DNA from: Sminthopsis crassicaudata
Taxonomy: Eukaryota
NCBI RefSeq assembly: GCF_048593235.1
Contig: NC_133622.1
Span: forward strand, 246,950,055-247,014,054
Direction of reading: 5' to 3'
Length of the DNA stretch: 64,000 bases
The translations under genes were made by a program, and so were the position numbers. The notes below the pieces were generated by a model. The model was not told the DNA's origin. It did not search any database and worked only from the letters and a program-made list of their open reading frames with translations. Below, piece by piece: positions 11,770-44,692 of the stretch (position 1 is its first letter; the number at the start of each line of letters is the position of its first letter).

Positions 11770-11907
11770 GTTCTCCAGATCCTGATAGGTCTAATCATCA
11801 CTTCATTTGGAGCCTTTTTGTTTTCCAATACCAACAAAATTGGCCTTCCAAAGTCAAGTATCCCTCGTTTCTTTATCACCAGGTATCCATTCTGGACAGG
11901 AGCATGT
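11770..11907 (+). CDS. MS4A14: MS4A14-like exon 2 (TM1 and start of TM2, 46 aa)
   Basis: tttacacag|GTT...TGT|gtgagt. VLQILIGLIITSFGAFLF...RYPFWTGAC contains the MS4A hallmarks QIL(I)G and YPFW. Confidence 0.95.
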
Positions 11908-15440: not shown

Positions 15441-15593
15441 GATCACATGAGTCTTTACATGGATGTTCTCAGTGCCATGGTCTCTGCATCTGGGATTGGC
15501 GTCCTCTTCTACAGCTTATCTGTCCACCAGTTTCTCCAATGTGTTCGCCCTTCAGCAGGCAGCATATGTATCATGAGTGAAATCCTCCTTCAT
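15441..15593 (+). CDS. MS4A14: MS4A14-like exon 4 (TM3 and the two-cysteine extracellular loop, 51 aa)
   Basis: tctctttcag|GAT...CAT|gtaagt. MDVLSAMVSASGIGVLFYSL...CVRPSAGSIC follows the MS4A TM3 plus C...C loop pattern. Confidence 0.93.
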
Positions 15594-20819: not shown

Positions 20820-20924
20820 GGTATCCTGTCTGTCTTGCTGATCCTAATCATCATCCAATTCTCCATTGCTGCAATAGTCTTAGCCTTGAAGTGTAAAAGA
20901 ACAGGGGAAAGCTCTGCAGATGAG
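20820..20924 (+). CDS. MS4A14: MS4A14-like exon 5 (TM4, 35 aa); probable GC-AG donor
   Basis: ctcttgcag|GGT; GILSVLLILIIIQFSIAAIVLALKC is an MS4A TM4. No GT donor follows in frame. GAG|gcatgt fits a GC donor and keeps phase 0 with the acceptor at 22580. Confidence 0.85.
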
Positions 20925-22579
20925 GCATGTTCCACATCACTGAGAGAATCAAGACAGGCTGTGACATCTTGGAAGGTGACTGATTTGAGGGAATGGAATG
21001 AAGCACAGGAATCCTTTGAGGAGATAGCAGGGGGGAAGTTATATTAGTAAGGAAGTAGTAGGACATTTTCCACCTGGAAGAAATGTCCGCTATCTGGAGC
21101 TCAAAGAAGGCTGTTTCTTCCAACTTTCAGAAAGATTTCTTCTCCTTTTGTGCTTTTTTTTTTCTGGACCCAGAGCCCACATCCCTAATTGCCACTAGAC
21201 CCCTATGGTTTTAGGCCTGAGCTTGGCATTAAGAGAGTCATGGCTTAGAATCAACAACCACTGGTTTTATGACTGTGGACATTACATATTTAAATTGTCT
21301 GAGTCTGCATTCCATATGCAACTTGGGTGCATGAGAAGAGAGTGAATGTTCTTTGTAACACATACTTCAGAGAGTTTTGTCTTTTTTGTATGTGAAAACA
21401 CGCAGTATAGTCTTAGCAAAGTGCCCAAGAAAATACAAGAGAAAATATGAATATCTAATATTACTGTAACCTTGATCTTTGAGGGAAAGGAAAAATCTAG
21501 CACTCCCCTTGAAATTCTTGGATATGTTTATGAGTGCTTTTATGAAATGTTAACTGAACATTCAGAATTACTACATAAGGATTCAATTATTCTATATACA
21601 TAAGATCACCATATTTTCAAAAGATAATTAGTGGGAAAGAAGTTGAAAGGGAAATGAGAAAGTGTTCTGACATGAGCCTTGACCAAGGAATTCATCCCTC
21701 AGTGACCTTCTGTACCCTGAGCTGGACCAGTTCCAAGATGGCTCAACTTCCCAGGGGTCCTTGCTGAACCTTTTCCAGCATGGCAAAAATTGCTGTAGAT
21801 GAAATACCATTGGTACATGCTTTGAAAAGCTGGGTCATTTGTGTCTTCTGAAAAAAATTAGGGGACTGGAAGAGTTGTGCTTAATTCCAAATTAGGGCAG
21901 CTACCCATCCAATGAGTCGTTCATAAGTTCAAAATTCTATCCTTCTAAGACATTCAATAGTATGACTATAAAGTATGGAATCCCATCTAAGGTTGCCACA
22001 GGAAAAAAATATAAATAATGAATACCAGCTATTTGATTTTGGCTTATTTATTGCTTTGTTTAAAGATACATATTAAACCCAAAGAAACAGCACATTCTCC
22101 TGAAGAAATTATGTATCATTCTCTAATATAGCCTTAAGATACATTTTGGTGGGTAGAACCAAGAATTAGAAATTGTAAACAATTTTTGCCTTAGTGAAGG
22201 GAGAGGTAGTCAGTTCTTCCTTTGGATGAATCTAAAGTAAGTGTAAGCTATTTAAGAGAACAGGGTTGAACTATTCTACTTTACTATATTTAATTTTTTT
22301 TTTTTTTTGCTAATAAGAAGTACATAATTGTCACTTCCTAAATTCTCTATTGAGCACTGTACTTATCCTAGGGTGGAATATGATCAGAGTGGAAGTAAAG
22401 ATGTCCCAGTACCAAGGGGAAGAAAGGAAGATTTAATGAAGATAAGGAAGCAATTTAGAGAAGGCTGGGAATGTTTCGAAAGAGATAGATAGCTTTGAGG
22501 AGGAACTGTGGGAAGGATGATTTTTACAAGAAGTGACTATGGGGAGATTAATACCTCTCATTTCTGGTTGGCTTTATAG

Positions 22580-25500
22580 AATGTGTATTTCCGGTCTTCT
22601 GAAGTCAAGGAGCCTAAACAAACTGAGAATGTGGAAAACCAATTGCAGATCCAGATTGAGAAAAATCCTTCTGACAAAAATGAAGAAAAAAAATCAGTCT
22701 CCCTAATTAAGGGCTACACGTTCTTTAAACTAAGAGCTTTAGGAAGTCCTGTAACCCGCCCACCTCCTTGCACTACTACTCCTCCTCCCCCACCACCTCC
22801 TCCACCTCCTCCCCCACCACCTCCACCACCTTCCCCAAAAGTACCAGAAGAAAAGCTTCAAAAACAACGGTGCCCTACTCCAGCTTCTCCAAGTGAATCC
22901 TTGCAAATTTCATATTTCTCTGACCCAGGTTCATCAAGTGCATTGACACAAGGATCATCTTTCTTAGAACCATGCTCAATAGACAAATCTGTGCAAGTTT
23001 CCTCATATTCAGATCTAAGTTCAGGAGGAGAACTGACGGAATTTCCTCCTTCATCCAGCACAAGTTCAGTTAGTGAATCCACAAAATGTCTCTCTACCTC
23101 CAGCTCAGACGACGCCAATATTTGTCCCAAACAACCATCAGTGAGCATATCTGTGCAATTTCCTTCTGTCTCATGCACTACATCAAGAGAATTTGTAGGT
23201 ACCAAACGTTCAAGCATCCGTTTTGGGACCAAATCTGTGCAATGCCCTCCTATCTCGGGTACAACTTCCCCAACAGAAACAGAAAATGAAGATATCCTGA
23301 CCAAATGTTTGCAATTTCCTAATGTCTCATACACAATTTCTTCAACAGATGCTTTGGATACTTCAGACCATTTTAAACTGACCAAATCTGTACAATTTCC
23401 TTCTGTCTCATGCACAAATACAGCAATAGAATGCATAGATGCATCTGACTCTGCACTGACCAAATCTGTGCAATTCCCTTCTCTATCATGCATAGCTACA
23501 ACAACAGACGATTCAGCCTTCTTGTCACGGACAAAATCTGTGCAATGTCCTTCTGAATCAGGCATGCTTACAGCAAAAGACACCAAACTGACCAAGGCTA
23601 TGCAATTTCCTTCTAACTCGTGCATGGTTACAACAGAAGACAGCACACCTTCAGGCCTACTTGTACAAAGCAAGTCTATACAATTTCCTCCCTTCTCAAG
23701 CAGAACTACGTCACCAGATATCACAGATGCTGCACCTTCGTGCCAACTTGTACTGTCCAAATCTGTGCAATTCCCTTCTACCTCAGGCACAATTATACCA
23801 CCAGAAAGTCTTCCTCCATCCCATTTCAGTTCACTGCGTCAAACTATAGATACCACACCTTTCAGCACATGTGACCGATCTTCAACTCTGAAATCTCCAC
23901 CTCTCTCGCTCCCAGCTACACGGAGAACTACACCAGAAGCCACAGAAAGTGTTCCTCCATCCCATTTTAGTTCAATGCGTCAATCTGTACTAGATACCAC
24001 ACCTTACGGCTCACTTGACCTAACTACAAGTGTGATATCTCCACCTCCCTCAGGCCCAGCTACAAGAAGGACTACACCAGAAGTCCCAGAAAGTCTTCCA
24101 CCATCCCATTTCAGTTCAATGCGTCAAACTATGATAGATACTACACCTTATGGTTCACTTGACCTAACTACATCTGTGAAATCTCCACCTCCCTCAGAAC
24201 CAGCTACACGCAGGGCCACACCAGAAATCACAGAAAGTATTCCACCAACCCATTTTGGTTCAGTGCGTCAATCTATGATAGCTGCCACACCTTATACCTC
24301 ATTTGACCGAACTTCATCTGTGAAATCTCCACCTCCCTCGGTCCCAGCTACACGAAGGACTACACCAGAACCCATAGAAAGTCTTCCACCATCCCATTTC
24401 AGTTCAATGCGTCAATCTATGGTACCTGCCACACCTTTTGGCTCAATTGACCGAACTACATCTCTGAAATCTCCACCTCTCTCAGTCCCGGCCACACGAA
24501 GGACTACACCAGAACCCACAGAAAGTCTTCCGCCATCCCATTATGGTTCAGTACGTCAATCTATGATAGCTGCCATGCCTTTTGGCTCACTTGATGTGAC
24601 TACATCTGTGAAATCTCCACCTTCCTCGGTCCCAGGTACACGTAGGGCTACACCAGAAATTCCAGAAAATCAAGTCATGGAAGATTCCTCATTTCCAGGC
24701 CTTCTTGCACTGACTAAATCTATTCAATTTCCTTCTATCTCAGGCATGGCTATGCTAACAGAAGTCCCAGAAAATCAATCTCTGGAAGATACCACGGGCC
24801 TACTTGAGCTGAACAAGGCCATACAATTTCCTTCTCTCTCAAGCAGAGGCACATTATCAGAAGCCCCAGAAAGTCTTCCACCATCCCATTTCAGTTCAAT
24901 GCGCCCACCTATGATAGATGTCACACCTTATGGCTCACTTGACTTAACTCTGAAATCTCCACTTTCCTCTGTCCCGCCTACACGAAGAATCACACCAGAA
25001 GAAAGTCTTCCACCATCCCATTTTGGTTCTGTGCGTCAGTCTATGGTACCTGCCACACCTTTTGGCTCACTTGATCGAACTGTGAAATCTCCACCTCCCT
25101 CAGTCCCATCTACACGAAGGGCTACACCAGAAGCCACAGATTTTGGTTCAGTGCGTCAGTCTATGATAGCTGCCACGCCTTTTGGCTCACTGGACCTAAC
25201 TACATCTGTGAAATCTCCACCTTCCTCAGTCCCAGGTACACGTAGGGCTACACCAGACATTCCAGAAAATCAAGCCATGGAAGATGCCGCATATGCAGAC
25301 ATTCTAGCTCTGACTAAATCTGTTCAATTCCCTTCTATCTCAGGTATGCCAACAGAAGGGCCAGAAAATCAGCCTGTGGAAGACACCACACCTGCAGGAG
25401 TACTTGCCCTAACCAAGGGTATACAGTTTCCTTCTATATCAAGCAGAGGTGCATCAGCCGAAATCCCAGAGAGTCTTCCACCATCCCATTATAGTTCAAT

Positions 25501-28500
25501 GCGTCCACCTATGATAGATGCCACACCTTATAGCTCATTTGACCGAACTTCATCTGTGAAATCTCCACCTCCCTCAATGCCAGCTACACGAAGAACTACA
25601 CCAGAAATCCCAGAAAATTTTCCTCCATCCCATTTTGGTTCAGTGCGCCAATCTATAGTACCTGCCACACCTTTTGGCTCAGTTGATCGAACTGTGAAAT
25701 CTCCACCTCCCTCGGTCCCAGCTACACGAAGGACTACACCAGAACCCACAGAAAGTCTATCACCATCCCATTTTGGTTCAATGCGTCAATCTATGGTACC
25801 TGCCACACCTTTTGGCTCACTTGATCGAACTGTGAAATCTCCACCTCCCTCAGTCCTGGCTACACGAAGGACTACACCAGAACCCACAGAAAGTCTATTG
25901 CCATCCCATTATGGTTCAGTGCGTCAATCTATGATAGCTGCCATGCCTTTTGGTTCACTTGATGTGACTACATCTGTGAAATCTCCACCTTCCTCGATCC
26001 CAGGTACACGTAGGGCTACACCAGACATTCCAGAAAATCAAGCCATGGAAGATGCCGCATATGCAGACATTCTAGCTCTGACTAAATCTGTTCAATTTCC
26101 TTCTATCTCAGGCACGCCTATGCCAACAGAAGTCCCAGAAAATCAGCCTATGGAAGATACCATCCCTGCAAGCCTACTTGCGCTGACCAAGGGTATCCAG
26201 TTTCCTTCTATATCAAGCAGAGGTGCATCAGCCGAAATCCCAGAGAGTCTTCCACCATCCCATTATAGTTCAATGCGTCCACCTATGATAGATGCCACAC
26301 CTTATAGCTCATTTGACCGAACTTCATCTGTGAAATCTCCACCTCCCTCAGTCCCAGCTACACGAAGGGCTACACCAGAACCCACAGAAAGTCTATCGCC
26401 ATCCCATTATGGTTCAATGCGTCCACCTATGATAGATGCCACACCTTATAGCTCATTTGACCGAACTTCATCTGTGAAATCTCCACCTTCCTCAGTCCCG
26501 GCTACACGAAGGGCTACACCAGAACCCACAGAAAGTCTATCGCCATCCCATTATGGTTCAATGCGTCCACCTATGATAGATGCCACACCTTATAGCTCAT
26601 TTGACCGAACTTCATCTGTGAAATCTCCACTTTCCTCTGTCCCGGCTTCACGAAGAATCACACCAGAAGTCACAGAAAATTTTCCTCCATCCCATTTTGG
26701 TTCAGTGCGTCAATCTATGATAGCTGCCACACCTTATACCTCATTTGACCGAACTTCATCTGTGAAATCTCCACCTCCCTCACTCCCAGCTACACGAAGG
26801 ACTACACCAGAACCCACAGAAAGTCTATCACCATCCCATTATGGTTCAGTGCGTCAATCTATGATAGCTGCCACACCTTTTGGCTCACTTGACCTAACTA
26901 CATCTGTGAAATCTCCACCTTCCTCGGTCCCAGGTACACGTAGGGCTACACCAGACATTCCAGAAAATCAAGCCATGGAAGATGCTGCATATGCAGACCT
27001 TCTTGCACTGACTAAATCTGTTCAATTTCCTTCTATCTCCGGCATGGCTATGCCAACAGATATCCCAGAAAATCAGCTGATGGAAGACACCACAGGCATA
27101 CTTACCCTGAGCAAGGGTATACAATTTCCTTCTTTATCAAGCAGAGGTGCATCAGCCGAAATCCCAGAAAATCTTCCACCATCCAATTTCAGTTCAGTGC
27201 GTCAATCTATGGTAGATGCCACACCTTATGGCTTATTTAACCTGATTACATCTGTGAACCCTCCATCTCCCTCTGTCCCAGCTACACGAAGACCTACAGC
27301 AGCAGTCTCAGAAATTCCACCATCCCATTATGGTTCAGTGCGTCAAACTATGATAGATGCCACACCTTTTGGTCCAGTTGACCTATCTAGATCTGTGAAA
27401 TCTCCACTTTCCTCTGTCCCAGCTACCCGAAGGACTACACCAGAAGTTACAGAAAACCTACCATCCCATTTTAGTTCATTGCGTCAACCTATGGCAGATA
27501 CCACACATTTTGGTCCAGTTGACCTAATAATAGCAGTGCAATCTCCGTCTTCCTCTGTCCTACCTACACAAGGTATAGCAACTGAAGTCCCAGAAAATCA
27601 ATTCATGGAAGATACCATACTTTCAGGCCCCCATGCATTAACCAAATCTATTCAATTTCCTTTCATCTCAGGCCCAGCCACACCAATAGAAGTCTCAGAA
27701 AATCAATCCACTGAAGATGCCACAATTTCAGGCCCTCTTGTACGGTCCAAATCTGTGCAATTTCCTTCTATCTCAGGCACGGCTACACCTACAGAAGTCC
27801 CAGAAAATCTTCTATCCAATTTCAGTTCAATACCACAATCTATGGATGATACCACACCTTTTGACTTATTTAACGTGACTTCATCTGTGCAATCTCCACG
27901 TTCCTCTGCCCCAGTTCCACGAAGATCTACACCAACAGAATTCAGAGAAAATCGTCCTCTATCCAGTTTCGGTTTGTTGACTCATTCCACTGAAATTGCT
28001 CCACCTTTACGCTTTACCTTATCTATGCAATCTCTAATTTCCTCTGTCCCAACTACACCAAGGGTAATCACAGAAAACTCTCATCCATCCAATTTAAGTT
28101 CATTGACTCATTCCACTGAAATTGCTATACCTTTACACTTAATTGACCTGACCACACCTGTATTCATAGAAGCAGTACCTTTCACATCTACACAATCTCT
28201 ATTTACTTCTGCCCCAAGTGTTCCAAGAGAAATCTTGGAAGATCCTCATTTATCCATTTTAAACACATCATTTCAATCTACTGAAATTGCCACACCTTTT
28301 GGCTTACTTGACCTTGTCTCATTTTCACAATCTCCCCATTCTTCTGTCCTGACAACACTAACAGAGGTCTCAAAAAGTCCTCCTTTATCCAATTTAAGTC
28401 CATTGATTCAATCTACTGAAGGTACCATACATTCAAGCCCAAGTTTGCTGACCAAATCTGTGCAATTTCCTTCTCTCTCAGACACAGTTAACTCAACAGA

Positions 28501-31500
28501 AGTCCCAGGTAATCATCTTCCATCCAAATCCAATTCAATGACTCAATCTATGGAAGATGCCACATCTTTAGGCCCATTTTCACTGACCAAAGTTATACAG
28601 TTTCCTTCTATCTCAGGCTCAGTTACCTCAACAGAAGTCCCAGGAAATCCTCTTCCATCCAATTTCAGTTCAATGACTCAATCTATAGAAGACGCCACAC
28701 CTCCAAGCCCAAGTTTGCTGACCAAATTTGTGCAATTTCCTTCTATCTCAGGCCCGGCTACCTCAACAGACATCTCAGGAAACCCTCCTCCATCCAATTT
28801 CAATCCAATGACTCAATCTGTGGAAGATGCCCCACCTTCAGGTCCACGTTTGCTGACCAAATCTGTGCAATTTCCTTCTGTCTCAGGCTTGGCTGCCTCA
28901 ACAGAAGATTCAGGAAATCCTCCTCCATCCAATGTAAGTTTAATGACTCAATCTATGGAAGATGCCACACCTCCAAGCCCAAGTTTGCTGACCAAATCTG
29001 TGCAATTTCCTTCTATCTCAGGCCCGGCTATCTCAACAGAAGTCTCAGGAAATCCTCCTCCATCCAATTTAAGTTCAATGACTCAATATATGGAAGATGC
29101 CACACCTTCAAGCCCACATTTGCTGACCAAATCTGTGCAATTTCCTTCTATCTCAGGCCCAGCCATCTCAAGAGAAGTCTCAGGAAATCCTCTTCCATCC
29201 AATTTAAGTTCGATGATTAAATCCATGGAAGAAGAGAGACCTTCAGGCCTACTTGCCCTGAACGAATCTGTGCAACTTCCCTCTTTCTCAGGGCCAAGTA
29301 AATCAAATAAAATCATACAGATTCTCCCTTTCTCTTCCAAATCAAATTCACTCACAAACAAATCTGTGCATTTTCCCTCTTTTTCAGGTCCAAGTGCACC
29401 AATAGCTGAAGTTCCCTCTTTCTCTGCACTGAGCTCATCAAAGGAATCCACAAAACTTCTAATATCTGCAAGTAAATCTATACAATTCCATTCTTTCTCA
29501 GATTCTGTTCCAGCAAGTAAATTTATAAGTCCCTTTCCCCCTGACTCAAGTTCATCAAGGGAACCCATAGATGTTCCTTCTTTGGGATCTATTGCAATAA
29601 GCAAATCTTTGCAAGTATCTTTCTTGATTTCAAGTTTAGTCAAAGAATACACAGAGAGTCCATCTTTGCTAAGATTAAATTCAGGGTCAAAAATAAAAAA
29701 GGATCATCCTCCCTCTTTTCCAATTTTATCAAAAGAATCCATAGGAGCTCATTTTTCATATAACCTAATTTCAGAAAACAAAGGCATGCAGGTTCCTCGT
29801 GTTGAGATTTTTTTTTCAAATAAAGCTATCCAAATTCCCTCTATATGTGAAATACATTTAGTGAATGACTTTGCAGAAGTTCTGTGTGCATTCAGCTCAA
29901 GTCAATCAGGAAAATTTATACAATATCCCATTGCAGCTAGAATACTTTTAGAAAGCAAATCAGTGCAAGTTCCTTTTTCTGCTGCTATATTTTCTAAAAG
30001 TAAATCTATAAAATTTTCTTCTTCCTCTAGCGGAATTTCAATGACACAATCCACACAATGTCTTTCATTTTTTGACTCAACATCAAGTGAATGCATGGAA
30101 GTTCAATCTTTCTCAGTTCCACTTTCATCAAACAAATCCATACAAATTCTTTATTTCTCTGAGTCAAAATCATCAAAAGAAGACATACACTTTCTCTCAA
30201 CCTACCATACTACTGCTGTGAACAAACTGATGCAAGTATGTTTCTTTTCTGATATAGGTCCATCATCTCCACACAAAGCAGTTATAGCTTTGCCAGGTCC
30301 ACTTTTATCAAGAGAATCTAAGTTCCCCTTGGATTTTGTTGCTATTTTAAGCATAAAGCTTATTCGATTTCCTTCATTTTCTGATCAAAGTTCATCAGAC
30401 ACATATACACAGGAACTCCCATCTTTTCAAGTTGCAGTTTCATCACAAGAATATAGAAACGTTTGTACTTTCTCTGAAACTAATTCGCCAACAGAAGCTG
30501 CTACAGTTCCCTCTACTTATGGTGGCCTTATATTTGCCAAGTCTACACAAGTTTCTTTTATTTTTGTCTTAAGTTCATCAATAGTAATACCAGAAAAATT
30601 TATATCCTTCCCAGATCCACTTTTATCAAAGGAATCAATAGAACACAACTTCAATTTTATTATTAACTCACTTAGTAAACACACACATATTCCTGATATA
30701 TATTACCCAAGTTCATTAAATGTAAGCACAGAAGTTTCATCTTTCTTGCTTCCATTTTATCCAACAGAATCCAGGCAATTTTCTGATTCCTCTGACTCAA
30801 GCTGGCTGAGAAAAGTTAAAAAAATGTACTCTATCAATGGACCTATTTCAGTGAGAGAATGCACACAAATTTTTCACTCTTCTGATAAAAGTTTATCAAC
30901 AGAACCTTTACAATTACTGAGAGAAGATATAAATTTGCCTTCTAGTCATAGATCTATTTCAGTGAGACAATTCACACAAAGTTCTCATTCTTCTGATAAA
31001 TGTTTGCCAACAGAAAATTTACAGGTTCTTTCCATCGACTTTGATGTCAGAGTGAGCAACTTGACACAACTTTCTTCTCTGTTTGATGCAAATTCATCAA
31101 ATGAATGTATAAAAGAGGTTATATCTTTTCCAGTGCCACTTAAATTGAGAGAATCCAACCCAAATCTCTTGAACCTTGGTGTTAGTTCAGGCAGCAAGCT
31201 CAAACAAATTCCTTTTATCTTTGATCCAAGTTCATTACATAAGAACACATCTTTATCTTTCTTATTACCATTTTATCCAATAGAATCCAGGAAATTTTCT
31301 GATTTCTCTGTGATAAGTCTACTAAGAGAAAACATGCAAATTCCTTCTATCCTTGGAGCTATTTCAGTGAACAAATGCACAGTATTTTCTCACTCTTTTG
31401 ATAAATGTTTGCCAACAGAAACTTTACAAGTTCCCTCTACCCTCCTTGTTATCACAGTGAGCAAATCAATACTACAATCCTCCTTATCTGGAACAAGTTC

Positions 31501-32581
31501 ATCAACTGTATATCTAGAAAAAGTTGTTTGTTTGGCATGTTCTCTTTCACCAAGAGAATCCTTCCAAAATCCCTCAAATCTCGATGTGACTTCAGTCAGC
31601 AAGCTCACGAAATTTCCTCCTTTCTCTCACCCAAGTTCAATGAATGCCAAAACAGAAATTACATTTTTCTTGCTTCCATTTTGTCCAAAAGAATCCAAGC
31701 ACTTTTCTGATTTCTCTGACACAATGCTACCAAGACAAAAAGTACAAATTCCCTCTATACTTGGATCTCTTTCAATGAGTAAATGCACACAATTTTCTCA
31801 TACCTCTGATAAAAGCTTACCAACAGGAACTTTACAACTTTCCTCTACCCACCTTGCTGTCACAGTGAACAAATTAATGCAACATACTTTATTCTTTGAT
31901 GAAAGTTCATTAGCTGTAAGCATAGAAGAAGTTATACCTTTCCCATCCTTTCCAAAATCAAAGGAATCAATACAACATCCCTCAAACTTTGTTGATATTT
32001 TAGTCAGTAAGTCTGTTCAATTTTCTTCTTCCTCTGTTCTAAGTTCATTGAATATAAACATAAAAGAAGTTTCATCTTTCTTGCTTCTACTTTGTCCAAA
32101 AGAATCCAGAAAGTGTTTTGATTTCTTAAATATGAGTTTCTCTAGAGAAAATAGGCAAATTCTATCTATTCTTGGACTTATAACAGTAAGCAAAGACACA
32201 CAATTTTCTCTCTACTGTGAGAAAACTTTACCAACAGAAACTTTAAAAGGTCCCTCTATCAATCCTGCTATCACAGAAAGCAAGCCAATACAACCTACCT
32301 ACTTCTCTGATATGTCTTTCCTGGATTCACTAAAATCAAAGGAATCTATCCAACATCTCTCAAAACTCAGTAGTATTTCAGTTAACAAGTCCACCCAAAT
32401 TTCTTTTTTCTTTGTCCCAAGTTCATTGAATGTAAACACAGAAGAAGTTCCATCCTTCTTGCTTCCATTTTGTCAAACAGAATCCAAGCACTTTTCTGAT
32501 TTCTCTGACACAAGTTTACCAAAAGACGACACACAGAGGCTTTCTATCCTTGCACCTATTTCAGTGAGCAAAACCACATAA
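22580..32581 (+). CDS. MS4A14: MS4A14-like giant exon 6: 3,333-aa Ser/Thr/Pro-rich repetitive C-terminal tail
   Basis: Acceptor gctttatag|AAT in phase 0; open for 10,002 nt. The opening ENQLQIQIE...SLIKGYTFFKLRALGSP matches the start of the human MS4A14 last exon as I recall it (NDQLQFVLQE...SVIFGGYAFFKLTLSRSP). Confidence 0.9.
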   Translation, partial: NVYFRSSEVKEPKQTENVENQLQIQIEKNPSDKNEEKKSVSLIKGYTFFKLRALGSPVTRPPPCTTTPPPPPPPPPPPPPPPPPSPKVPEEKLQKQRCPTPASPSESLQISYFSDPGSSSALTQGSSFLEPCSIDKSVQVSSYSDLSSGGELTEFPPSSSTSSVSESTKCLSTSSSDDANICPKQPSVSISVQFPSVSCTTSREFVGTKRSSIRFGTKSVQCPPISGTTSPTETENEDILTKCLQFPNVSYTISSTDALDTSDHFKLTKSVQFPSVSCTNTAIECIDASDSALTKSVQFPSLSCIATTTDDSAFLSRTKSVQCPSESGMLTAKDTKLTKAMQFPSNSCMVTTEDSTPSGLLVQSKSIQFPPFSSRTTSPDITDAAPSCQLVLSKSVQFPSTSGTIIPPESLPPSHFSSLRQTIDTTPFSTCDRSSTLKSPPLSLPATRRTTPEATESVPPSHFSSMRQSVLDTTPYGSLDLTTSVISPPPSGPATRRTTPEVPESLPPSHFSSMRQTMIDTTPYGSLDLTTSVKSPPPSEPATRRATPEITESIPPTHFGSVRQSMIAATPYTSFDRTSSVKSPPPSVPATRRTTPEPIESLPPSHFSSMRQSMVPATPFGSIDRTTSLKSPPLSVPATRRTTPEPTESLPPSHYGSVRQSMIAAMPFGSLDVTTSVKSPPSSVPGTRRATPEIPENQVMEDSSFPGLLALTKSIQFPSISGMAMLTEVPENQSLEDTTGLLELNKAIQFPSLSSRGTLSEAPESLPPSHFSSMRPPMIDVTPYGSLDLTLKSPLSSVPPTRRITPEESLPPSHFGSVRQSMVPATPFGSLDRTVKSPPPSVPSTRRATPEATDFGSVRQSMIAATPFGSLDLTTSVKSPPSSVPGTRRATPDIPENQAMEDAAYADILALTKSVQFPSISGMPTEGPENQPVEDTTPAGVLALTKGIQFPSISSRGASAEIPESLPPSHYSSMRPPMIDATPYSSFDRTSSVKSPPPSMPATRRTTPEIPENFPPSHFGSVRQSIVPATPFGSVDRTVKSPPPSVPATRRTTPEPTESLSPSHFGSMRQSMVPATPFGSLDRTVKSPPPSVLATRRTTPEPTESLLPSHYGSVRQSMIAAMPFGSLDVTTSVKSPPSSIPGTRRATPDIPENQAMEDAAYADILALTKSVQFPSISGTPMPTEVPENQPMEDTIPASLLALTKGIQFPSISSRGASAEIPESLPPSHYSSMRPPMIDATPYSSFDRTSSVKSPPPSVPATRRATPEPTESLSPSHYGSMRPPMIDATPYSSFDRTSSVKSPPSSVPATRRATPEPTESLSPSHYGSMRPPMIDATPYSSFDRTSSVKSPLSSVPASRRITPEVTENFPPSHFGSVRQSMIAATPYTSFDRTSSVKSPPPSLPATRRTTPEPTESLSPSHYGSVRQSMIAATPFGSLDLTTSVKSPPSSVPGTRRATPDIPENQAMEDAAYADLLALTKSVQFPSISGMAMPTDIPENQLMEDTTGILTLSKGIQFPSLSSRGASAEIPENLPPSNFSSVRQSMVDATPYGLFNLITSVNPPSPSVPATRRPTAAVSEIPPSHYGSVRQTMIDATPFGPVDLSRSVKSPLSSVPATRRTTPEVTENLPSHFSSLRQPMADTTHFGPVDLIIAVQSPSSSVLPTQGIATEVPENQFMEDTILSGPHALTKSIQFPFISGPATPIEVSENQSTEDATISGPLVRSKSVQFPSISGTATPTEVPENLLSNFSSIPQSMDDTTPFDLFNVTSSVQSPRSSAPVPRRSTPTEFRENRPLSSFGLLTHSTEIAPPLRFTLSMQSLISSVPTTPRVITENSHPSNLSSLTHSTEIAIPLHLIDLTTPVFIEAVPFTSTQSLFTSAPSVPREILEDPHLSILNTSFQSTEIATPFGLLDLVSFSQSPHSSVLTTLTEVSKSPPLSNLSPLIQSTEGTIHSSPSLLTKSVQFPSLSDTVNSTEVPGNHLPSKSNSMTQSMEDATSLGPFSLTKVIQFPSISGSVTSTEVPGNPLPSNFSSMTQSIEDATPPSPSLLTKFVQFPSISGPATSTDISGNPPPSNFNPMTQSVEDAPPSGPRLLTKSVQFPSVSGLAASTEDSGNPPPSNVSLMTQSMEDATPPSPSLLTKSVQFPSISGPAISTEVSGNPPPSNLSSMTQYMEDATPSSPHLLTKSVQFPSISGPAISREVSGNPLPSNLSSMIKSMEEERPSGLLALNESVQLPSFSGPSKSNKIIQILPFSSKSNSLTNKSVHFPSFSGPSAPIAEVPSFSALSSSKESTKLLISASKSIQFHSFSDSVPASKFISPFPPDSSSSREPIDVPSLGSIAISKSLQVSFLISSLVKEYTESPSLLRLNSGSKIKKDHPPSFPILSKESIGAHFSYNLISENKGMQVPRVEIFFSNKAIQIPSICEIHLVNDFAEVLCAFSSSQSGKFIQYPIAARILLESKSVQVPFSAAIFSKSKSIKFSSSSSGISMTQSTQCLSFFDSTSSECMEVQSFSVPLSSNKSIQILYFSESKSSKEDIHFLSTYHTTAVNKLMQVCFFSDIGPSSPHKAVIALPGPLLSRESKFPLDFVAILSIKLIRFPSFSDQSSSDTYTQELPSFQVAVSSQEYRNVCTFSETNSPTEAATVPSTYGGLIFAKSTQVSFIFVLSSSIVIPEKFISFPDPLLSKESIEHNFNFIINSLSKHTHIPDIYYPSSLNVSTEVSSFLLPFYPTESRQFSDSSDSSWLRKVKKMYSINGPISVRECTQIFHSSDKSLSTEPLQLLREDINLPSSHRSISVRQFTQSSHSSDKCLPTENLQVLSIDFDVRVSNLTQLSSLFDANSSNECIKEVISFPVPLKLRESNPNLLNLGVSSGSKLKQIPFIFDPSSLHKNTSLSFLLPFYPIESRKFSDFSVISLLRENMQIPSILGAISVNKCTVFSHSFDKCLPTETLQVPSTLLVITVSKSILQSSLSGTSSSTVYLEKVVCLACSLSPRESFQNPSNLDVTSVSKLTKFPPFSHPSSMNAKTEITFFLLPFCPKESKHFSDFSDTMLPRQKVQIPSILGSLSMSKCTQFSHTSDKSLPTGTLQLSSTHLAVTVNKLMQHTLFFDESSLAVSIEEVIPFPSFPKSKESIQHPSNFVDILVSKSVQFSSSSVLSSLNINIKEVSSFLLLLCPKESRKCFDFLNMSFSRENRQILSILGLITVSKDTQFSLYCEKTLPTETLKGPSINPAITESKPIQPTYFSDMSFLDSLKSKESIQHLSKLSSISVNKSTQISFFFVPSSLNVNTEEVPSFLLPFCQTESKHFSDFSDTSLPKDDTQRLSILAPISVSKTT
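22781..22831 (+). repeat. Polyproline tract (17 Pro)
   Basis: Seventeen consecutive CCT/CCC/CCA codons. Confidence 0.95.
23809..27900 (+). repeat. Coding tandem array: ~21 units of 144/138 nt (48/46 aa) interleaved with pairs of ~35-aa KSVQF modules
   Basis: Unit ESLPPSHF(S/G)S(M/V)RQSM(I/V)xATP(Y/F)GSxDxTxSVKSPPxSVPATRRxTPE; e.g. starts at 23946, 24090 and 24234 (144-nt period). Confidence 0.95.
28440..29290 (+). repeat. Coding tandem array of 135-nt (45-aa) units, 6-7 copies
   Basis: ctgaccaaa recurs at 28448, 28583, 28718, 28853, 28988 and 29123. Confidence 0.95.
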
Positions 32582-32611
32582 TTTACTCACTCATCTTGTT
32601 AAACTTTTTAA

Positions 32612-35600
32612 AAGTTTAACAACGGAAATTTTACAAGTTCTTTCCACCCACCTTGCTGTCACAAAGAGCACATCTACTTTGTTGACGTAAGTTCAGCAAC
32701 TATAAATACAGAAGAAGCTATGTCTTTCTCAGGCCAACATAAATCACAGAAATCTATCCAAGATCATGCAAGCCTTGGTATTCTTTCAGTGAATAAGTCC
32801 ACCCAAGTTTCTTCTTCCTCTGTCCCAAGTTCATTGAATGAGAGCACAAAAGAAATTTTAAATTTCTTATTTCCATTTTGTCCAACAGAATCCAGGCAAT
32901 TTTCTGATAGCTCTGATACTTGCCTACCAAAAGATGACTCACAAAAACCTCCTAACTTTGGAACTCTTTCAGTGAGCAGCTGCACACAACTTTCTCACTC
33001 CTCTCACAAAAGTTTAACCACAGAAAGTTTACCAGTTTCCTCTGCTGATCTTGCTGTCATACAGAGCAAATGGACACAAACTACTTCCTCATTGGACAAA
33101 AGTCCATCAGGAGTAGACATAAAAGAAAGGATACCTTTCTCAGGTTCATTAAAATCAAGAGAATCCATCCAACATCTCTCAAACCTTGGAGATGATGTAG
33201 TTAACAAGTCCACCCAAGTTTCTTCTTCCTCTTTTCTAAGTTCAGTAAATGTGAACAGAAAAGAAGCTCCATCTGTCTTGCTTCCATTTCATCCAACAGA
33301 ATCCAAGGACCTGTCCAATTTTGACACAGATCTACCAAAAGAAGACACAGAAAGGCTTACTATCCCTGAACCTATTTCAGTGAGCAGCCAAATACAACTC
33401 TCTCAGTCCTCTCATAAGAGTTTAACAGAAATTTTAACAGTTCCCTCTACTGATATTGCTGTTAAAGAGAACAAATGGACACAAATTACTTCCTCATTAG
33501 ATGTAAGTCCATCAGGGGTAGGTATAAAAGAAGCTATGTCTATCTCAGGTTCGCTAAAATCAAAGGAATCCATCCAACATCTCTCAAACCTTAGTCTTGT
33601 TTTACCCAGCAAGTCCACCCAAGTTTCTTCTTCCTCTTTCGTAAGTTCAGTGAATGTGAACATAGAAGAAGCCCCAGAAAGGCTTACTATCCCTAAACCT
33701 AGTTCAGTGAGCAGCCAAATACAACTCTCTCAGTCCTCTCAGAAGAGTTTAACAGAAATTTTACCAGTTCCCTCTATCCATCTTGCTCTCACAGAGAACA
33801 AATGGACACAAATTACTTCCTCATTAGATGTAAGTCCATCAGGGGTAGGTATAAAAGAAACTATGTCTGTCTCAGGTTCACTAAAATCAAAGGAATCCAT
33901 CCAACATCTCTCAAACCTTAGTCTTGTTTTACCCAGCAAGTCCACCCAAGTTTCTTCTTCCTCTTTCGTAAGTTCAGTGAATGTGAACACAGAAGCAGCC
34001 CCAGAAAGGCTTACTATCCCTAAACCTATTTCAGTGAGCAGCCAAATACAACTCTCTCAGTCCTCTCACAAGAGTTTAACAGAGATTTTACCAGTCCCCT
34101 CTATCCATCTTGCTGTCAAAGAGAGCAAATGGACACAAATTACTTCCTCATTAGATGTAAGTCCATCAGGGGTAGGTATAAAAGAAACTATGTCTGTCTC
34201 AGGTTCACTAAAATCAAAGGAATCCATCCAACATCTCTCAAACCTTAGTCTTGTTTTACCCAGCAAGTCCACCCAAGTTTCTTCTTCCTCTTTCGTAAGT
34301 TCAGTGAATGTGAACACAGAAGAAGCCCAAGAAAGGCTTACTATCCCTGAACCTAGTTCAGTGAGCAGCCAAATACAACTCTCTCAGTCCTCCCATAAGA
34401 GTTTAACAGAAATTTTACCAGTTCCCTCTATCCATCTTGCTCTCACAGAGAACAAATGGACACAAACTACTTCCTTATTGGATGTAAGTCCATCAGGGGT
34501 ACATATAAAAGAAGCGCTGTCTGTCTCAGGTTCACTAAAATCTAAGGAATCCATCCAACATCTCTCAAACCTTAGTCTTGTTTTAGTCAGCAAGTCCACC
34601 CAAGTTTCTTCTTCCTCTTTCGTAAGTTCAGTGAATGTGAACACAGAAGACCAAGAAAGTCTTACTATCCCTGAACCTATTTCAGTAAGCAGCCAAATGC
34701 AACTTTCTCAGTCCCCTCATAAGAGTTTAACAGAAATTTTACCAGTTTCCTCTACTGATATTGCTGTGTCACAGAGCAAATGGACACAAACTACTTCCTT
34801 ATTAGATGTAAGTTCATCAGGGGTAGGCATAAAAGAAGCTACCTCTTTTACATCTGTTACGTCTGTCTCAGGTTCACTAAAATCAAAAGAATCCATCGAA
34901 CATCTCTCAAACCTTAGTCTTGTTTTAGTCAGCAAGTCCACCCAAGTTTCTTCTTCCTCTTTCGTAAGTTCAGTGAATGTGAGCACAGAAGAAGCCCAAG
35001 AAAGACTTACTATCTCTGAACCTATTTCAGTGAGCAGCCAAATACAACTTTCTCACTCCTCTCACAAGAGTTTAACAGAGATTTTACCAGTCAGAGAGAG
35101 CAAATGGACACAAACTACTTCCTTATTGGATGTAAGGCCATCAGAGGTAGGTATAAAAGAAGCTATGTCTGATTCAGTTTCACTAAAATCAAAGGAATCT
35201 ATCCAATCTCTCTCAAACCATAGTCTTGTTTTACTCAGCAAGTCCACCCAAGTTTCTTCTTCCTCTTTCGTAAGTTCAGTGAATGTGAACACAGAAGCAG
35301 CTCCATCTGTTTTGCTTCCATTTCATCCAAAAGAATCCAGGCAGCTGTCTGGCTTTGAAACAGGTCTACCAAAAGAAGAAATACAAAAGCCTACTATCCC
35401 TGAACCTATTTCAGTGAGTAGTCAAATACAACTTTCTCAGTCCTCTCATAAAAGTTTAACAGAAGAAATTTTACCAGTTCCCTCTACCCATCTTGCTATC
35501 ACAGAGAGGAAAATGACACAATCCACTTCCTCATTGGATATAAGTCCATCAGGGGTAGGCATAAAAGAAGCTCTATCTGTCTCAGGTTCACTAAAATCAA

Positions 35601-38600
35601 AGGAATCCATCCAACATCTCTCAAACCTTAGTCTTGTTTTACCCAGCAAGTCCACCCAAGTTTCTTCTTCATCTTTCCTGCGTTTCTTGAAAGTGAAAGA
35701 AGAAGCTCAATCTAGCTTGCTTCCATATTATCCAAGAGAATCCAGACAGCTATCTGACTTTGACAGAGGTCTACCAAAAGATGACAAAGAAAAGCCTACT
35801 ATCCCTGAACCTATTTCAGTAAGAAGTCAAAAACTTTCTCGGTCCTCTCCTAAAAGTTTAAAAGCAGAAACTGTACCAATTCCCTCTACCCATCTTGCTC
35901 TCATAGAAAGTAAATCAAAACAGTCTACTCCTTTATTTAATGCAAGTTCATCAGCTGTAGGCATAAAAGAAGTGATGTCTTTCCAGCTTTCACTAAAATC
36001 AAAGGAATCTATCCAAGATATCACAAACCTTGGTATTATTTCGATCAATAAGTCCACCCAAGTTTCTTCTTCCTCTGTCCCAAGTTCATTGAATGAGAAA
36101 ACGAAAGAAATTCTACATTTCTTGTTTCCATTTTGTCCAGTAGAATCGAGGCAATTTTCTGATATTTCTGACACTTGCCTACTAAAAGAAGAACGACAAA
36201 GGACTTCTCTCATACCTATTTCACTGAGCAAATGCACACAATTTTCTCATTCTTCTCATAAAAGTTTAACAGAAACTTTACCACTTCCCTCCACCTGTCT
36301 TGCTGTCACAGAGAGCAAATCGAAACAATCTAGTTCCTTAATTAAGTCAAGTTCATTAGTTGTAGGAATAGAAGAAGCTATGTCTTTCTCAGGGTCACTA
36401 AAATCAAAGGAATCCATCGAACATCTCTCAAACCTTAGTCTTGTTTTACTCAGCAAGTCCACCCAAGTTTCTTCTTCCTCTTTCCTAAGTTCAGTGAATG
36501 TGAAGGCAGAAGAAGCTCCATCAGTCTTGCTTTCATTTCATCCAAAAAAATCCAGGCAGCTGTCTGACTTTGACACAGGTTTACCAAAAGAAGAAACAGA
36601 AAAACCTATCATCCCTGAACCTATTTCAGTGAGCAGCCAAATAGAACTTTCCCACTCTTCTCATAAAAGTTTAACAGAAATTTTACCAGTCCCCTCTATC
36701 CATCTCCCTCTCACAGAGAGCAAATGGACACAAACTTCTTCCTTATTGGATATAAATCCATCAGGAGTAGGCATAAAAGAAGCTATATCTGTCTCAGGTT
36801 CATTAAAATCAAAGGAATCCATCCAATCTCTCTCAAACCTTAGTCTTGTTTTACTTAGCAAGTCCACCCAAGTTTCTTCTTCCTCTTTTGTAAGTTCAGT
36901 GAATGTGAACATAGAAGCCCCAGAAAGGCTTACTATCCCTGAACCTATTTCAGTGAGCAGCCAAATAGAATTTTCCCACTCCTCTCATAAAAGTTTAACA
37001 GAAATTTTACCCATTCCCTCTATCCATCTCGTTGTCACAGAGAACAAATGGACACAAACTTCTTCCTTATTGGATGTAAGGCCATCACGGATGGGTATAA
37101 AAGAAGCGATGTCTTTTACATCTGTTACGTCTGTCTCAGGTTCACTAAAATCAAAAGAATCCATCGAACATCTCTCAAACCTTAGTCTTGTTTTACTCAG
37201 CAAGTCCACCCAAGTTTCTTCTTCCTCTTTCGTAAGTTCAGTGAATGTGAACACAGAAGAAGCCCCATCTGTCTTGCTTCCACTTCATCCAAAAGAATCC
37301 AGGCAATTGTCTGATATTGACACAGGTCTATCAAAAGACGACACAGAAAAGCCTACTGTCCCTGAACCTATTTCAGTGAGCAGCCAAATACAACTCTCTC
37401 AGTCCTCTCATAAAAGTTTAACAGAGATTTTACCAGTTCCCTCTATCCATCTTGCTGTCAAGCCTACTATCTCTGAACCTATTTCAGTGAGCAGCCCAAT
37501 CCAACTATCTCAGTCCTCTCATAAAAGTTTAACGGAAGAAATTTTATCAGTTCCCTCTATCCATCTTGCTGTCAAGCCTACTATCTCTGAACCTATTTCA
37601 GTGAGCAGCCCAATCCAACTATCTCAGTCCTCTCATAAAAGTTTAACAGAAGAAATTTTACCAGTTGCCTCTATCCATCTTGCTGTCAAGCTTACTATCT
37701 CTGAACCTATTTCAGTGAGCAGCCCAATCCAACTAGCTCAGTCCTCTCATAAAAGTTTAACGGAAGAAATTTTACGAGTTCCCTCTATCCATCTTGCTGT
37801 CAAACCTACTATCTCTGAACCTATTTCAGTGAGCAGCCCAATCCAACTATCTCAGTCCTCTCATAAAAGTTTAACAGAAGAAATTTTACCAGTTCCCTCT
37901 ATCCATCTTGCTGTCAAAGAGAGCAAATGGACACAAACTACTTCCTTATTGGATGTAAGTCCATCAGGGCTAGGCACAAAAGAAGCTATATCTGTCTCAG
38001 GTTCATTAAAATCAAAGGAATCCATCCAACACATTTCAAATCTTAGTCTTGTTTTAATCAGCAAGTCCACCCAAGTTTCTTCTTCCTCTTTTGTAAGTTC
38101 AGTGAATGTGAACACAGAAGAAGCCCAAGAAAGGCTTACTATCCCTGAACCTAGTTCAGTGAGCAGCCAAATACAACTCTCTCAGTCCTCTCATAAAAGT
38201 TTAACAGAGATTTTACCAGTTCCCTCTATCCATCTTGCTGTCACACAGAGCAAATGGACACAAACTACTTCCTTATTGGATGTAAGTCCATCAGGGCTAG
38301 GCACAAAAGAAGCTATATCTGTCTCAGGTTCATTAAAATCAAAAGAATCCATCGAACATCTCTCAAACCTTAGTCTTGTTTTAGTCAGCAAGTCCACCCA
38401 AGTTTCTTCTTCCTCTTTCGTAAGTTCAGTGAATGTGAACATAGAAGAAGCCCCAGAAAGGCTTACTATCCCTGAACCTATTTCAGTGAGCAGCCAAATA
38501 CAACTCTCTCAGTCCTCTCATAAAAGTTTAACAGAGATTTTACCAGTTCCCTCTATCCATCTTGCTGTCACACAGAGCAAATGGACACAAACTACTTTCT

Positions 38601-39835: not shown

Positions 39836-39839
39836 TAAA
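39834..39839 (+). terminator. Candidate poly(A) signal overlapping the ORF2 stop
   Basis: AAT TAA TAA AG contains AATAAA, with ttgtttgt about 20 nt downstream. Confidence 0.35.
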
Positions 39840-44690: not shown

Positions 44691-44692
44691 TA

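What the first reader, a model, noticed from the sequence alone, without database searches (positions are those of the whole stretch)
23360..32040. About 25 RVxF-type motifs: a candidate multivalent PP1 phosphatase docking array
By manual count the first ORF has about two dozen K-x-[VI]-x-F motifs (KSVQF, KSIQF, KGIQF, KAIQF, KVIQF, KFVQF, KSVHF). They are usually in the context LTKSVQFPS and stay conserved while flanks diverge. This matches the established PP1-binding consensus [KR]-x(0,1)-[VI]-{P}-[FW], and the Ser in KSVxF is a known phospho-off switch. Most PP1 regulators have one or a few such motifs. With four TMs the tail is cytosolic, and sperm use the testis-specific isoform PP1gamma2. 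Function is inference.
Basis: partly seen in the sequence, partly recalled or inferred. Interest (0 to 1): 0.78.

Follow-up and report, generated by a model that had tools for sequence, protein, structure and literature searches.

The report
Repeat-core motif array, PP1 docking unproven
The roughly 25 PP1-type motifs are real, but they are one local spelling of an older repeated 12-residue core in the giant tail of a marsupial MS4A membrane protein, and the positions kept by evolution are not those PP1 reads.

Summary
ORF1 (22583-32581, +) has 27 K-x-[VI]-x-F and 26 strict RVxF matches, against 0.7 and 2.6 in shuffles. About 23 are copies of one tandemly amplified unit, so the count is not independent evidence.

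The ORF is the start of a giant last exon of an MS4A (CD20-like) gene. An RNA contig splices the TM4 exon to it (20975|22580, GT..AG). The only relatives found are marsupial, including opossum isoforms of up to 5589 aa.

The block under purifying selection is 12 residues, L-T-K-S-[VI]-Q-F-P-S-[IL]-S-G. Across ORF1, ORF2, opossum and dunnart the shared core is phi-Q-phi-[PS]. Q defines the census, P dominates at +2, and K, V/I and F are often replaced. RVxF compliance is 22/45 in ORF1, 0/43 in ORF2, 4/49 in opossum and 3/22 in dunnart. Twenty 48-aa units descend from the motif unit with the motif destroyed, yet were amplified.

The core fits published LC8/DYNLL rules at every position except +1 (F), which has no precedent in that paper's lists. 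The claimed Ser phospho-switch is at the wrong position. PP1 docking is not excluded (inhibitor-1 uses KIQF), but it is a minority reading.

An earlier scan note proposed LC8 for ORF2; I reuse that reading.

The parts
11770..11949 (+). Exon piece encoding TM1 and the start of TM2 of an MS4A/CD20-like protein
   Evidence: Pfam CD20 PF04103 scores 30.7 bits, above its 27.9 cut-off. tblastn to the opossum protein P0002 gives 42% identity.
15438..15593 (+). Exon piece encoding TM3 and the second extracellular loop
   Evidence: tblastn to opossum P0002 and koala P0001 gives 40-47% identity.
20820..20975 (+). TM4 exon of 52 codons, followed by a canonical GT donor at 20976
   Evidence: The contig of run X3 joins 20820-20975 to 22580 onward, skipping 1604 nt with GT..AG ends. 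Run X3 has no depth in the intron. Sequence read.
22580..32578 (+). First open part of the giant last exon (ORF1, about 3333 codons): an S/P/T-rich repetitive tail
   Evidence: Composition is S 18.9%, P 11.9%, T 8.9%. No Pfam family matches. An RNA contig covers 22580-23990 with no differences.
22985..23773 (+). Proximal cluster of ten diverged core copies 20-82 residues apart: KSVQV, KSVQC x2, KCLQF, KAMQF, KSVQF x3, KSIQF x1 and others. Four are RVxF-compliant.
   Evidence: The copies align to the opossum tail only through the motif instances. AlphaFold2 on this region gives pLDDT 35.
23802..27809 (+). Super-repeat: pairs of L-T-K-S-V-Q-F / L-T-K-G-I-Q-F 33-35 residues apart, separated by runs of a 48-aa unit carrying T-R-R-[TA]-T-P-E (20 copies)
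   Evidence: TRF periods 144, 138, 132 and 105 nt. Motif list. RR.[ST]P occurs 20 times against 0.2 in shuffles. The 48-aa unit is DNA-homologous to the motif unit, with the motif replaced.
28360..29296 (+). Seven 45-aa units; six carry L-L-T-K-S-V-Q-F-P-S-I-S-G
   Evidence: TRF period 135 nt, 6.9 copies, 83% matches. Motif positions. The AlphaFold2 model places strands on L-L-T-K-S-V-Q, at pLDDT 55.
29300..32040 (+). Degenerate repeats with mixed cores (KSIQI, KLMQV, KSTQV, KCTQF, KSVQF and others) and scattered RVxF-type hits
32579..32611 (+). Three in-frame stop codons between ORF1 and ORF2
   Evidence: Frame translation puts stops at 32579, 32600 and 32609.
32720..39835 (+). ORF2, same frame. 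The same repeat core is spelled S-K-S-T-Q-V-S-S (20 or more copies) and S-K-W-T-Q-T/I (13 copies). It has no RVxF match.

Best explanation
The RVxF hits are the local spelling, K-S-[VI]-Q-F-P-S-[IL]-S-G, of an old repeat core. That core recurs about 90 times along the C-terminal tail of a marsupial giant MS4A (MS4A14-like) four-pass membrane protein, and also in its opossum and dunnart relatives. The tail is presumably cytosolic.

Shown here:
- The gene identity, the in-frame splice into the exon, and transcription of the exon's start.
- Purifying selection on a 12-residue block.
- A family-wide core of phi-Q-phi-[PS], in which Q anchors the census and P dominates at +2, while K, [VI] and F are often replaced.

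Inferred:
- The tail is disordered.
- The block works as a multivalent docking motif that binds a partner as an added beta-strand, and the partner reads the Q-centred core.
- The best-fitting known reader is an LC8/DYNLL-type dimeric hub. The fit is canonical for the TQV and TQT copies in ORF2 and the orthologues. It is non-canonical for the ORF1 copies because of F at +1.

The high RVxF density of ORF1 comes from tandem amplification of one K-S-[VI]-Q-F variant in this lineage, not from selection for PP1 sites.
For: Gene identity and expression:
- Pfam CD20 hit on the TM1 exon.
- Relatives are opossum P0002/P0005, which carry PF04103, plus koala and dunnart proteins.
- Spliced RNA contig joining 20975 to 22580 at depth 262.

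Selection:
- Low nonsynonymous diversity together with synonymous variants across L-T-K-S-[VI]-Q-F-P-S-[IL]-S-G.
- The proximal tails of the window and opossum align only through the motif copies.

Family census, with Q required by the search pattern:
- +1 is F 27/45 in ORF1, 1/43 in ORF2, 13/49 in opossum and 6/22 in dunnart.
- -3 is K or E; -1 is V, I, T, M or L.
- RVxF-compliant copies number 22, 0, 4 and 3.
- A separate scan anchored only on the downstream P-x-[FIL]-S-[GD] still finds Q at position 0 in most copies.

Fit to published LC8 rules (PMC6607443): Q at 0, a mid-sized residue at -1, P/D/E at +2, a large or basic residue at -3, a polar residue at -4. L-T-K-S-V-Q-F-P meets all of these except +1.

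Other points:
- V-Q-C, seen twice in the proximal cluster, is a known LC8 anchor (gephyrin).
- Multivalent LC8 clients are an established class.
- The 48-aa unit is a motif-less derivative that was amplified 20 times. Amplification therefore did not depend on keeping the motif.
Against: - No VQF, IQF or TQF anchor occurs in the binder, non-binder or predicted lists of the LC8 paper. The paper states that the +1 residue is buried and mid-sized.
- The K-W-T-Q-T copies of ORF2 carry a bulky aromatic at -2, which is disfavoured.
- The equally conserved downstream S-[IFL]-S-[GD] lies outside the LC8 footprint.
- F at +1 is itself kept in a subset of copies in all three species, so it may matter to an unknown reader or to PP1.
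- No binding data exist.
- Disorder rests only on composition and single-sequence AlphaFold2 runs (pLDDT 35 and 55).
- Only the first 1.4 kb of the exon is shown in RNA.
Confidence: 0.4

Rival explanations
1. The K-S-[VI]-Q-F copies of ORF1 are working RVxF sites, and each docks one PP1 catalytic subunit. The tail is then a membrane-anchored multivalent PP1 scaffold or sink, for example for PP1gamma2 in spermatids or sperm.
For: - 26-27 consensus matches, of which 13-21 pass stricter definitions.
- K, [VI] and F are kept in all 23 strong copies, with synonymous variation.
- K-I-Q-F is the validated PP1 motif of inhibitor-1 (PMC5758809), so Q at x has a precedent.
- Cytosolic topology is expected.
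- The start of the exon is highly transcribed.
- Human MS4A14 protein is found in spermatids and sperm (PMC9290968).
- F at +1 fits PP1 and does not fit LC8.
Against: - The constraint on Q, P and S at +8 is unexplained by PP1 docking.
- The same core elsewhere in the family replaces K with E, [VI] with T, M or L, and F with V, I, C or T. Compliance is 0/43, 4/49 and 3/22. Even in the window's own proximal cluster only 4 of about 10 copies comply.
- There is no basic-upstream or acidic-downstream bias.
- The alleged Ser switch is not at the documented x position.
- No paper links MS4A14 with PP1.
- To my knowledge no PP1 partner with an array of this kind is known.
Confidence: 0.18
2. The block is not a docking motif for either known hub. 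It could be a structural element of a beta-rich repeat fold or a self-assembling material, such as a solenoid or cross-beta packing. Alternatively it is read by an unknown partner that recognises the whole phi-Q-phi-P-S-phi-S-[GD] block.
For: - The conserved block is 12 residues with alternating hydrophobic positions, which is longer than either known motif.
- The downstream P-S-[FIL]-S-[GD] is conserved across species.
- AlphaFold2 places periodic strands on the block in the 45-aa repeats, with pTM 0.46.
Against: - Model confidence is low (pLDDT 55), and the proximal cluster gives pLDDT 35 with almost no structure.
- AlphaFold2 is known to over-predict solenoids for tandem repeats (my own knowledge).
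- Spacing between copies ranges from 20 to more than 300 residues, which does not suit a regular fold.
- The S/P/T-rich composition suggests disorder.
Confidence: 0.27
3. The array has no function of its own. It is the by-product of unequal crossing-over in a fast-evolving, partly decaying tail, and much of it is not made into protein.
For: - Three in-frame stops follow ORF1, and stops are dense beyond 39.8 kb.
- Motif-less derivative units were amplified just as readily.
- Tail identity between marsupials is only about 26-34%.
- The opossum has short isoforms of 597-1232 aa alongside the giant ones.
Against: - 10 kb and 7 kb stay open in one frame.
- The synonymous versus nonsynonymous pattern shows constraint on the block.
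- The motif is retained between opossum and the window while flanks are scrambled.
- Organism B shows in-frame 6- and 9-nt indels.
- The RNA depth is high.
Confidence: 0.15

Closest known systems
RVxF docking motif of PP1-interacting proteins, for example inhibitor-1/DARPP-32 (R-K-I-Q-F) and Ki-67/RepoMan (RVSF/RVTF)
   Same: The ORF1 copies fit [KR]-x(0,1)-[VI]-{P}-[FW]. I-Q-F is the same as in inhibitor-1. The setting is an extended, probably disordered cytosolic segment.
   Different: - Known partners carry one or a few motifs, whereas this tail has more than 20.
- The x residue is Q, so the documented phospho-switch at x is absent.
- Flank charge bias is absent.
- The K/V/F triad is not the conserved feature in paralogous and orthologous copies.
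Multivalent LC8/DYNLL clients with TQT-type motifs (ASCIZ/ATMIN, Chica, GKAP, KANK1)
   Same: - The motif is centred on Q, with a beta-branched residue at -1, K at -3, a polar residue at -4 and P at +2.
- Many copies are separated by short disordered linkers.
- The ORF2 and opossum copies (K-S-T-Q-V) are canonical.
- V-Q-C occurs here as it does in gephyrin.
   Different: - ORF1 copies have F at +1, with no precedent in the LC8Hub-derived lists.
- The conserved downstream S-phi-S-G is not part of the LC8 motif.
- The copy number, 45 plus 43, far exceeds the seven motifs reported for Drosophila ASCIZ (PMC10046861).
- The array sits on a membrane protein.
MS4A14, the long-tailed testis-enriched member of the MS4A/CD20 family
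   Same: It has a CD20-like four-pass core followed by an exceptionally long C-terminal tail (PMC2826416). Human MS4A14 is found in spermatids and sperm.
   Different: [quoted passage not shown]
- No eutherian protein was detected at E<=0.001, so orthology is not shown.
- Database names for the marsupial relatives are 'mucin-2-like' or 'uncharacterized'.

Membership tests
PP1 RVxF docking motif (ELM DOC_PP1_RVXF_1) | Sequence fits [RK]-x(0,1)-[VI]-{P}-[FW] | tested here: met
   ORF1 has 26 strict and 27 ELM-style matches. Stricter definitions recalled from memory give 13 and 21.
PP1 RVxF docking motif (ELM DOC_PP1_RVXF_1) | The anchor residues (basic, V/I, F/W) are the ones conserved among related copies and orthologues | tested here: not met
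   RVxF-compliant copies of the repeat core number 22/45 in ORF1, 0/43 in ORF2, 4/49 in opossum and 3/22 in dunnart. Replacements are K to E, V/I to T/M/L, and F to V/I/C/T.
PP1 RVxF docking motif (ELM DOC_PP1_RVXF_1) | Basic residues upstream raise affinity (PMC12313075); acidic residues downstream are typical (my own knowledge) | tested here: not met
   Basic residues are 7 of 138 upstream positions and acidic residues 2 of 138 downstream positions.
PP1 RVxF docking motif (ELM DOC_PP1_RVXF_1) | Accessible, disordered and on the cytosolic side | tested here: inconclusive
   Composition is 67% disorder-promoting residues. AlphaFold2 gives pLDDT 35 and 55. Cytosolic side is inferred from MS4A topology and from K-C-K-R after TM4.
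PP1 RVxF docking motif (ELM DOC_PP1_RVXF_1) | Physical binding to the PP1 catalytic subunit, lost on V/F to A mutation | not testable with these tools
LC8/DYNLL TQT-type binding motif | Gln at position 0, with mid-sized hydrogen-bonding or hydrophobic residues at -1 and +1 | tested here: inconclusive
   Q is present in every census copy because the search pattern requires it, and in most copies of a downstream-anchored scan. Position -1 is V, I or T. Position +1 is V or T in ORF2 and in most orthologue copies, but F in 27/45 ORF1 copies. No QF anchor appears in the published lists.
LC8/DYNLL TQT-type binding motif | P/D/E at +2, a large or basic residue at -3, a polar residue at -4, no bulky aromatic at -2 | tested here: met
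   In ORF1, P is at +2 in 30/45 copies, K at -3 in 37/45, T/S/N at -4 and S at -2. Rules are from PMC6607443. Exception: the K-W-T-Q-T copies of ORF2 have W at -2.
LC8/DYNLL TQT-type binding motif | Physical binding to the LC8 dimer | not testable with these tools
   No complex modelling or binding assay was available.
MS4A / CD20-like family (MS4A14-like) | CD20-like domain with four transmembrane spans | tested here: met
   PF04103 scores 30.7 bits against a 27.9 cut-off on the TM1 exon. TM1, TM3 and TM4 exons were located by tblastn to opossum and koala. The second half of TM2 was not located. The opossum relative carries PF04103.
MS4A / CD20-like family (MS4A14-like) | Orthology to eutherian MS4A14 | not tested
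   No eutherian hit at E<=0.001 with the first 1200 aa of the tail. No eutherian sequence was available for a core-domain tree or for synteny.
Inhibitor-1 / DARPP-32 type PP1 inhibitors | K-I-Q-F at residues 8-12 plus a PKA-site Thr at residue 35 preceded by Arg30-32, about 23 residues downstream (PMC5758809); homologous N-terminal region | tested here: not met
   K-x-I-Q-F and R-R-x-T-P both occur. The spacing is about 57 residues by my count, RRxTP units outnumber the motifs, no Pfam family matched, and the RRxTP unit is absent from opossum and dunnart.

The most novel reading that the evidence does not exclude
The ORF1 tail is a membrane-anchored, multivalent PP1 regulator in marsupial male germ cells. 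It would combine more than 20 K-x-[VI]-Q-F docking sites of the inhibitor-1/DARPP-32 spelling with 20 lineage-specific R-R-x-T-P sites. Once phosphorylated by a basophilic kinase, those sites could act as pseudosubstrate or inhibitory elements, making a kinase-switchable PP1 sink of a kind not described for any PP1 partner.
Probability: 0.1. Interest if true: 0.8.

Novelty: new variant of a known kind. Interest (0 to 1): 0.45.

Why it matters
Arrays of short docking motifs are how a few hub proteins, LC8 among them, turn disordered chains into ordered assemblies. A four-pass membrane protein carrying about 90 copies of one conserved 12-residue core on a multi-thousand-residue tail would be an extreme case. 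It is annotated only as 'mucin-like' or 'uncharacterized' in marsupials.

If the partner is LC8, the tail could form very long rod-like ladders anchored in a membrane, for example in spermatids. If it is PP1, it would be the first multivalent PP1 scaffold.

The case also carries a methodological caution. A regex match multiplied by tandem duplication looks highly significant against shuffles, yet says little about which reader selected the motif. Comparing paralogous and orthologous copies shows which positions actually matter.

Tried and rejected
- Word-index protein searches with ORF1 (residues 150-2350) and with a 700-aa piece found nothing. Low-complexity words probably swamped the candidate list.
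- Pfam on ORF1 gave no family. On ORF2 it gave only sub-threshold chance hits.
- The exhaustive representative search found only a koala fragment and the opossum cluster. No eutherian MS4A14 turned up, so motif conservation in placentals could not be examined.
- Paper searches linking MS4A14 with PP1 or DYNLL found nothing.
- Single-chain AlphaFold2 models were too low in confidence for a fold search, so none was run.
- The joints inside the exon (for example 23414 to 23801, with CA..CA ends and 20 foreign letters) also occur in a DNA-like run. I read them as repeat mis-joins or other repeat copies, not introns.
- I considered calcineurin LxVP/PxIxIT, SxIP, gamma-ear FxxPhi and FG-repeat readings of the downstream P-S-[FI]-S-G from memory. 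I dropped them because the required residues are not present.
- The inhibitor-1-like module idea fails on spacing and on lineage restriction. I keep it only as the novel case.
Full report
**Observation**

The + strand has an open frame from 22583 to 32581 (3332 codons). A second open frame follows in the same frame from 32720 to 39835. Three in-frame stops at 32579, 32600 and 32609 separate them.

ORF1 contains 27 K-x-[VI]-x-F. The first K codon is at 23384 and the last at 32009. It has 26 matches to [KR]-x(0,1)-[VI]-{P}-[FW] and 27 to the ELM-style pattern. Residue shuffles give 0.7, 2.6 and 4.3. ORF2 has none.

The enrichment is not independent evidence, because the motifs sit in tandem repeats of 144, 135 and 105 nt. 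About 23 strong copies belong to three descent groups:
- a proximal diverged cluster;
- five motif pairs in a super-repeat;
- six 45-aa units.

The last seven hits, in the degenerate region, include spellings such as KSIKF, KLIRF, KFISF and KQIPF. These look like chance or decay.

**What the locus is**

- An upstream exon piece (11719-12000) hits Pfam CD20 above its curated cut-off.
- tblastn with marsupial relatives locates the N-terminal, TM1, TM3 and TM4 exons.
- The giant exon begins at an AG acceptor, at 22580.
- A 2295-nt contig of run X3, at depth 262, joins 20820-20975 directly to 22580 and continues to 23990 without a mismatch. It skips 1604 nt with GT..AG ends. The same run has no depth in the intron, whereas the low-depth runs X1 and X2 cover the intron like genomic DNA.
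- The start of the exon is therefore transcribed, spliced in frame and abundant in that library. The library's tissue is coded and unknown to me.

The exhaustive protein search with the first 1200 residues found only two relatives. One is a koala fragment. The other is an opossum protein that carries PF04103 and is named 'mucin-2-like'. Its cluster includes opossum isoforms of 5589 and 5422 aa, and a dunnart tail protein is also related.

The window therefore comes from a marsupial, and giant tails are a marsupial feature of this gene. No eutherian protein was detected. 'MS4A14' is a description by architecture (long-tailed MS4A; PMC2826416), not a tested orthology. Human MS4A14 is mainly testicular and stains spermatids and sperm (PMC9290968).

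**What is conserved**

In 23 strong ORF1 copies the constrained block is 12 residues, L-T-K-S-[VI]-Q-F-P-S-[IL]-S-G. Nonsynonymous diversity is 0 to about 0.9 per codon inside the block and mostly above 1.2 in the flanks. Synonymous variants occur at K, Q, F and the downstream S. K, Q and P were fixed by the selecting regex. This is constraint at the protein level, and it covers more than the five RVxF positions.

The proximal tails of the window and opossum align only through the motif copies, at about 26% identity overall.

I ran a census of the core across the family, defined as phi-Q-phi-[PS] with downstream context. Q is present in every counted copy because the pattern requires it.

| Sequence | Core copies | F at +1 | RVxF-compliant |
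|---|---|---|---|
| Window ORF1 | 45 | 27 | 22 |
| Window ORF2 | 43 | 1 | 0 |
| Opossum tail | 49 | 13 | 4 |
| Dunnart | 22 | 6 | 3 |

- A separate scan, anchored only on the downstream P-x-[FIL]-S-[GD], still finds Q at position 0 in most copies.
- P dominates at +2 in ORF1, opossum and dunnart; ORF2 has S there.
- Position -3 is K or E.
- Position -1 is V, I, T, M or L.
- Position +1 is F, V, I, C or T.
- Typical opossum spellings are V-S-K-S-T-Q-V-P-I-F-S-D and [KR]-E-S-I-Q-V-P-D-F-S-D.
- In the window's own old proximal cluster only about 4 of 10 copies comply. The others include KSVQV, KSVQC twice, KCLQF and KAMQF.

The 48-aa unit that fills much of 23.8-27.6 kb has 20 copies, each with T-R-R-[TA]-T-P-E, and it is absent from opossum and dunnart. 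It is homologous at the DNA level to the motif unit. In it, T-K-S-V-Q-F-P-S-I-S-G is replaced by T-S-S-V-K-S-P-P-P-S-V. A motif-less derivative was therefore amplified as readily as the motif-bearing unit.

**PP1 reading**

In favour:
- The consensus fit is good.
- K-I-Q-F is the validated motif of inhibitor-1 (PMC5758809).
- F fits the PP1 pocket, and the location is probably cytosolic and disordered.

Against:
- The residues PP1 needs are the ones that vary in the family. Residues it does not need (Q, P, S at +8) are among the best kept.
- Flank charge preferences are absent. The upstream-basic rule is described in PMC12313075.
- The documented phospho-off switch is the x residue between V and F (PMC5005033).
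- No paper links MS4A14 to PP1.

**LC8 reading**

Published rules ask for Q at 0, mid-sized residues at -1 and +1, P/D/E at +2, a large or basic residue at -3, a polar residue at -4, and no bulky aromatic at -2 (PMC6607443).

L-T-K-S-V-Q-F-P meets every rule except +1. S-K-S-T-Q-V of ORF2 and K-S-T-Q-V-P of opossum are canonical. V-Q-C is a known anchor in gephyrin. Multivalent LC8 clients are an established class.

However, no VQF, IQF or TQF appears in that paper's binder, non-binder or predicted lists, whereas TQV, IQV and VQV are common. The conserved S-phi-S-[GD] lies outside the LC8 footprint. K-W-T-Q-T has a disfavoured W at -2. The LC8 idea for ORF2 was already in an earlier scan note (s1-429571). 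I reuse it and have only partly tested it.

**Structure**

Single-sequence AlphaFold2 on the six 45-aa repeats gives pLDDT 55 and pTM 0.46, with periodic strands on L-L-T-K-S-V-Q. On the proximal cluster it gives pLDDT 35 and pTM 0.25, with almost no secondary structure.

Composition is 67% disorder-promoting residues. This is compatible with a disordered tail whose block has beta propensity. It does not exclude a beta-rich repeat fold.

**Verdict**

The array is a real, transcribed and selectively maintained repeat-core motif array in a giant marsupial MS4A tail. Its RVxF density is a lineage-specific by-product of amplifying one spelling.

| Reading | My probability |
|---|---|
| Multivalent strand-addition docking array read through the Q-centred core, LC8-type hub the best known fit | about 0.4 |
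| Unknown reader or structural role | about 0.27 |
| PP1 docking on the QF subset | about 0.18 |
| No function | about 0.15 |

None of these can be settled without binding experiments or complex modelling.

Noticed in passing
window 20976-22579: The intron between the TM4 exon and the giant exon has a canonical GT..AG, as shown by a spliced RNA contig (20975|22580). An earlier scan note (s1-179240) proposed a non-canonical GC donor for this exon. The window's TM4 exon is also about 17 codons longer than the opossum's after the membrane span.
   Followed up: partly
window 23802-27600: There are twenty copies of a 48-aa unit with T-R-R-[TA]-T-P-E (RR.[ST]P 20 times against 0.2 in shuffles) and S-V-K-S-P-P. 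These could be basophilic or proline-directed kinase sites. The unit is absent from opossum and dunnart and derives from the motif unit with the motif destroyed.
   Followed up: partly
window 32579-32611 and 32720-39835: Three in-frame stops are followed by a 2371-codon open frame in the same phase. That frame is full of K-S-T-Q-V and K-W-T-Q-T/I cores. How, or whether, it is translated is open; it is the subject of other notes.
   Followed up: no
window 39836-46000: Beyond ORF2 the same frame breaks into dense stops, but the strong negative GC skew of the coding repeats continues to about 44-46 kb. There is also a 46-nt tandem repeat at 44171-44273. This looks like decayed former tail repeats or a repeat-derived 3' UTR.
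   Followed up: no
window 22779-22837: A poly-proline run of about 20 P, encoded by a 12/24-nt repeat, lies near the start of the tail. It is also present in koala and shorter in opossum. Read assemblies break at it.
   Followed up: no
window 23511 and 23576: A related species (organism B, about 90-95% identical) carries a 6-nt insertion and a 9-nt deletion here. Both are in frame, which is consistent with coding constraint on the proximal tail.
   Followed up: no
window 22858-23790 and 29083-29652, minus strand: Antisense open frames of 310 and 189 codons overlap the exon. They are probably a side effect of the skewed, stop-poor composition. I looked for no evidence on them.
   Followed up: no
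window 6479-6651: An N run of 173 bases (assembly gap or mask) lies in the intron upstream of the TM1 exon. I left it untouched.
   Followed up: no
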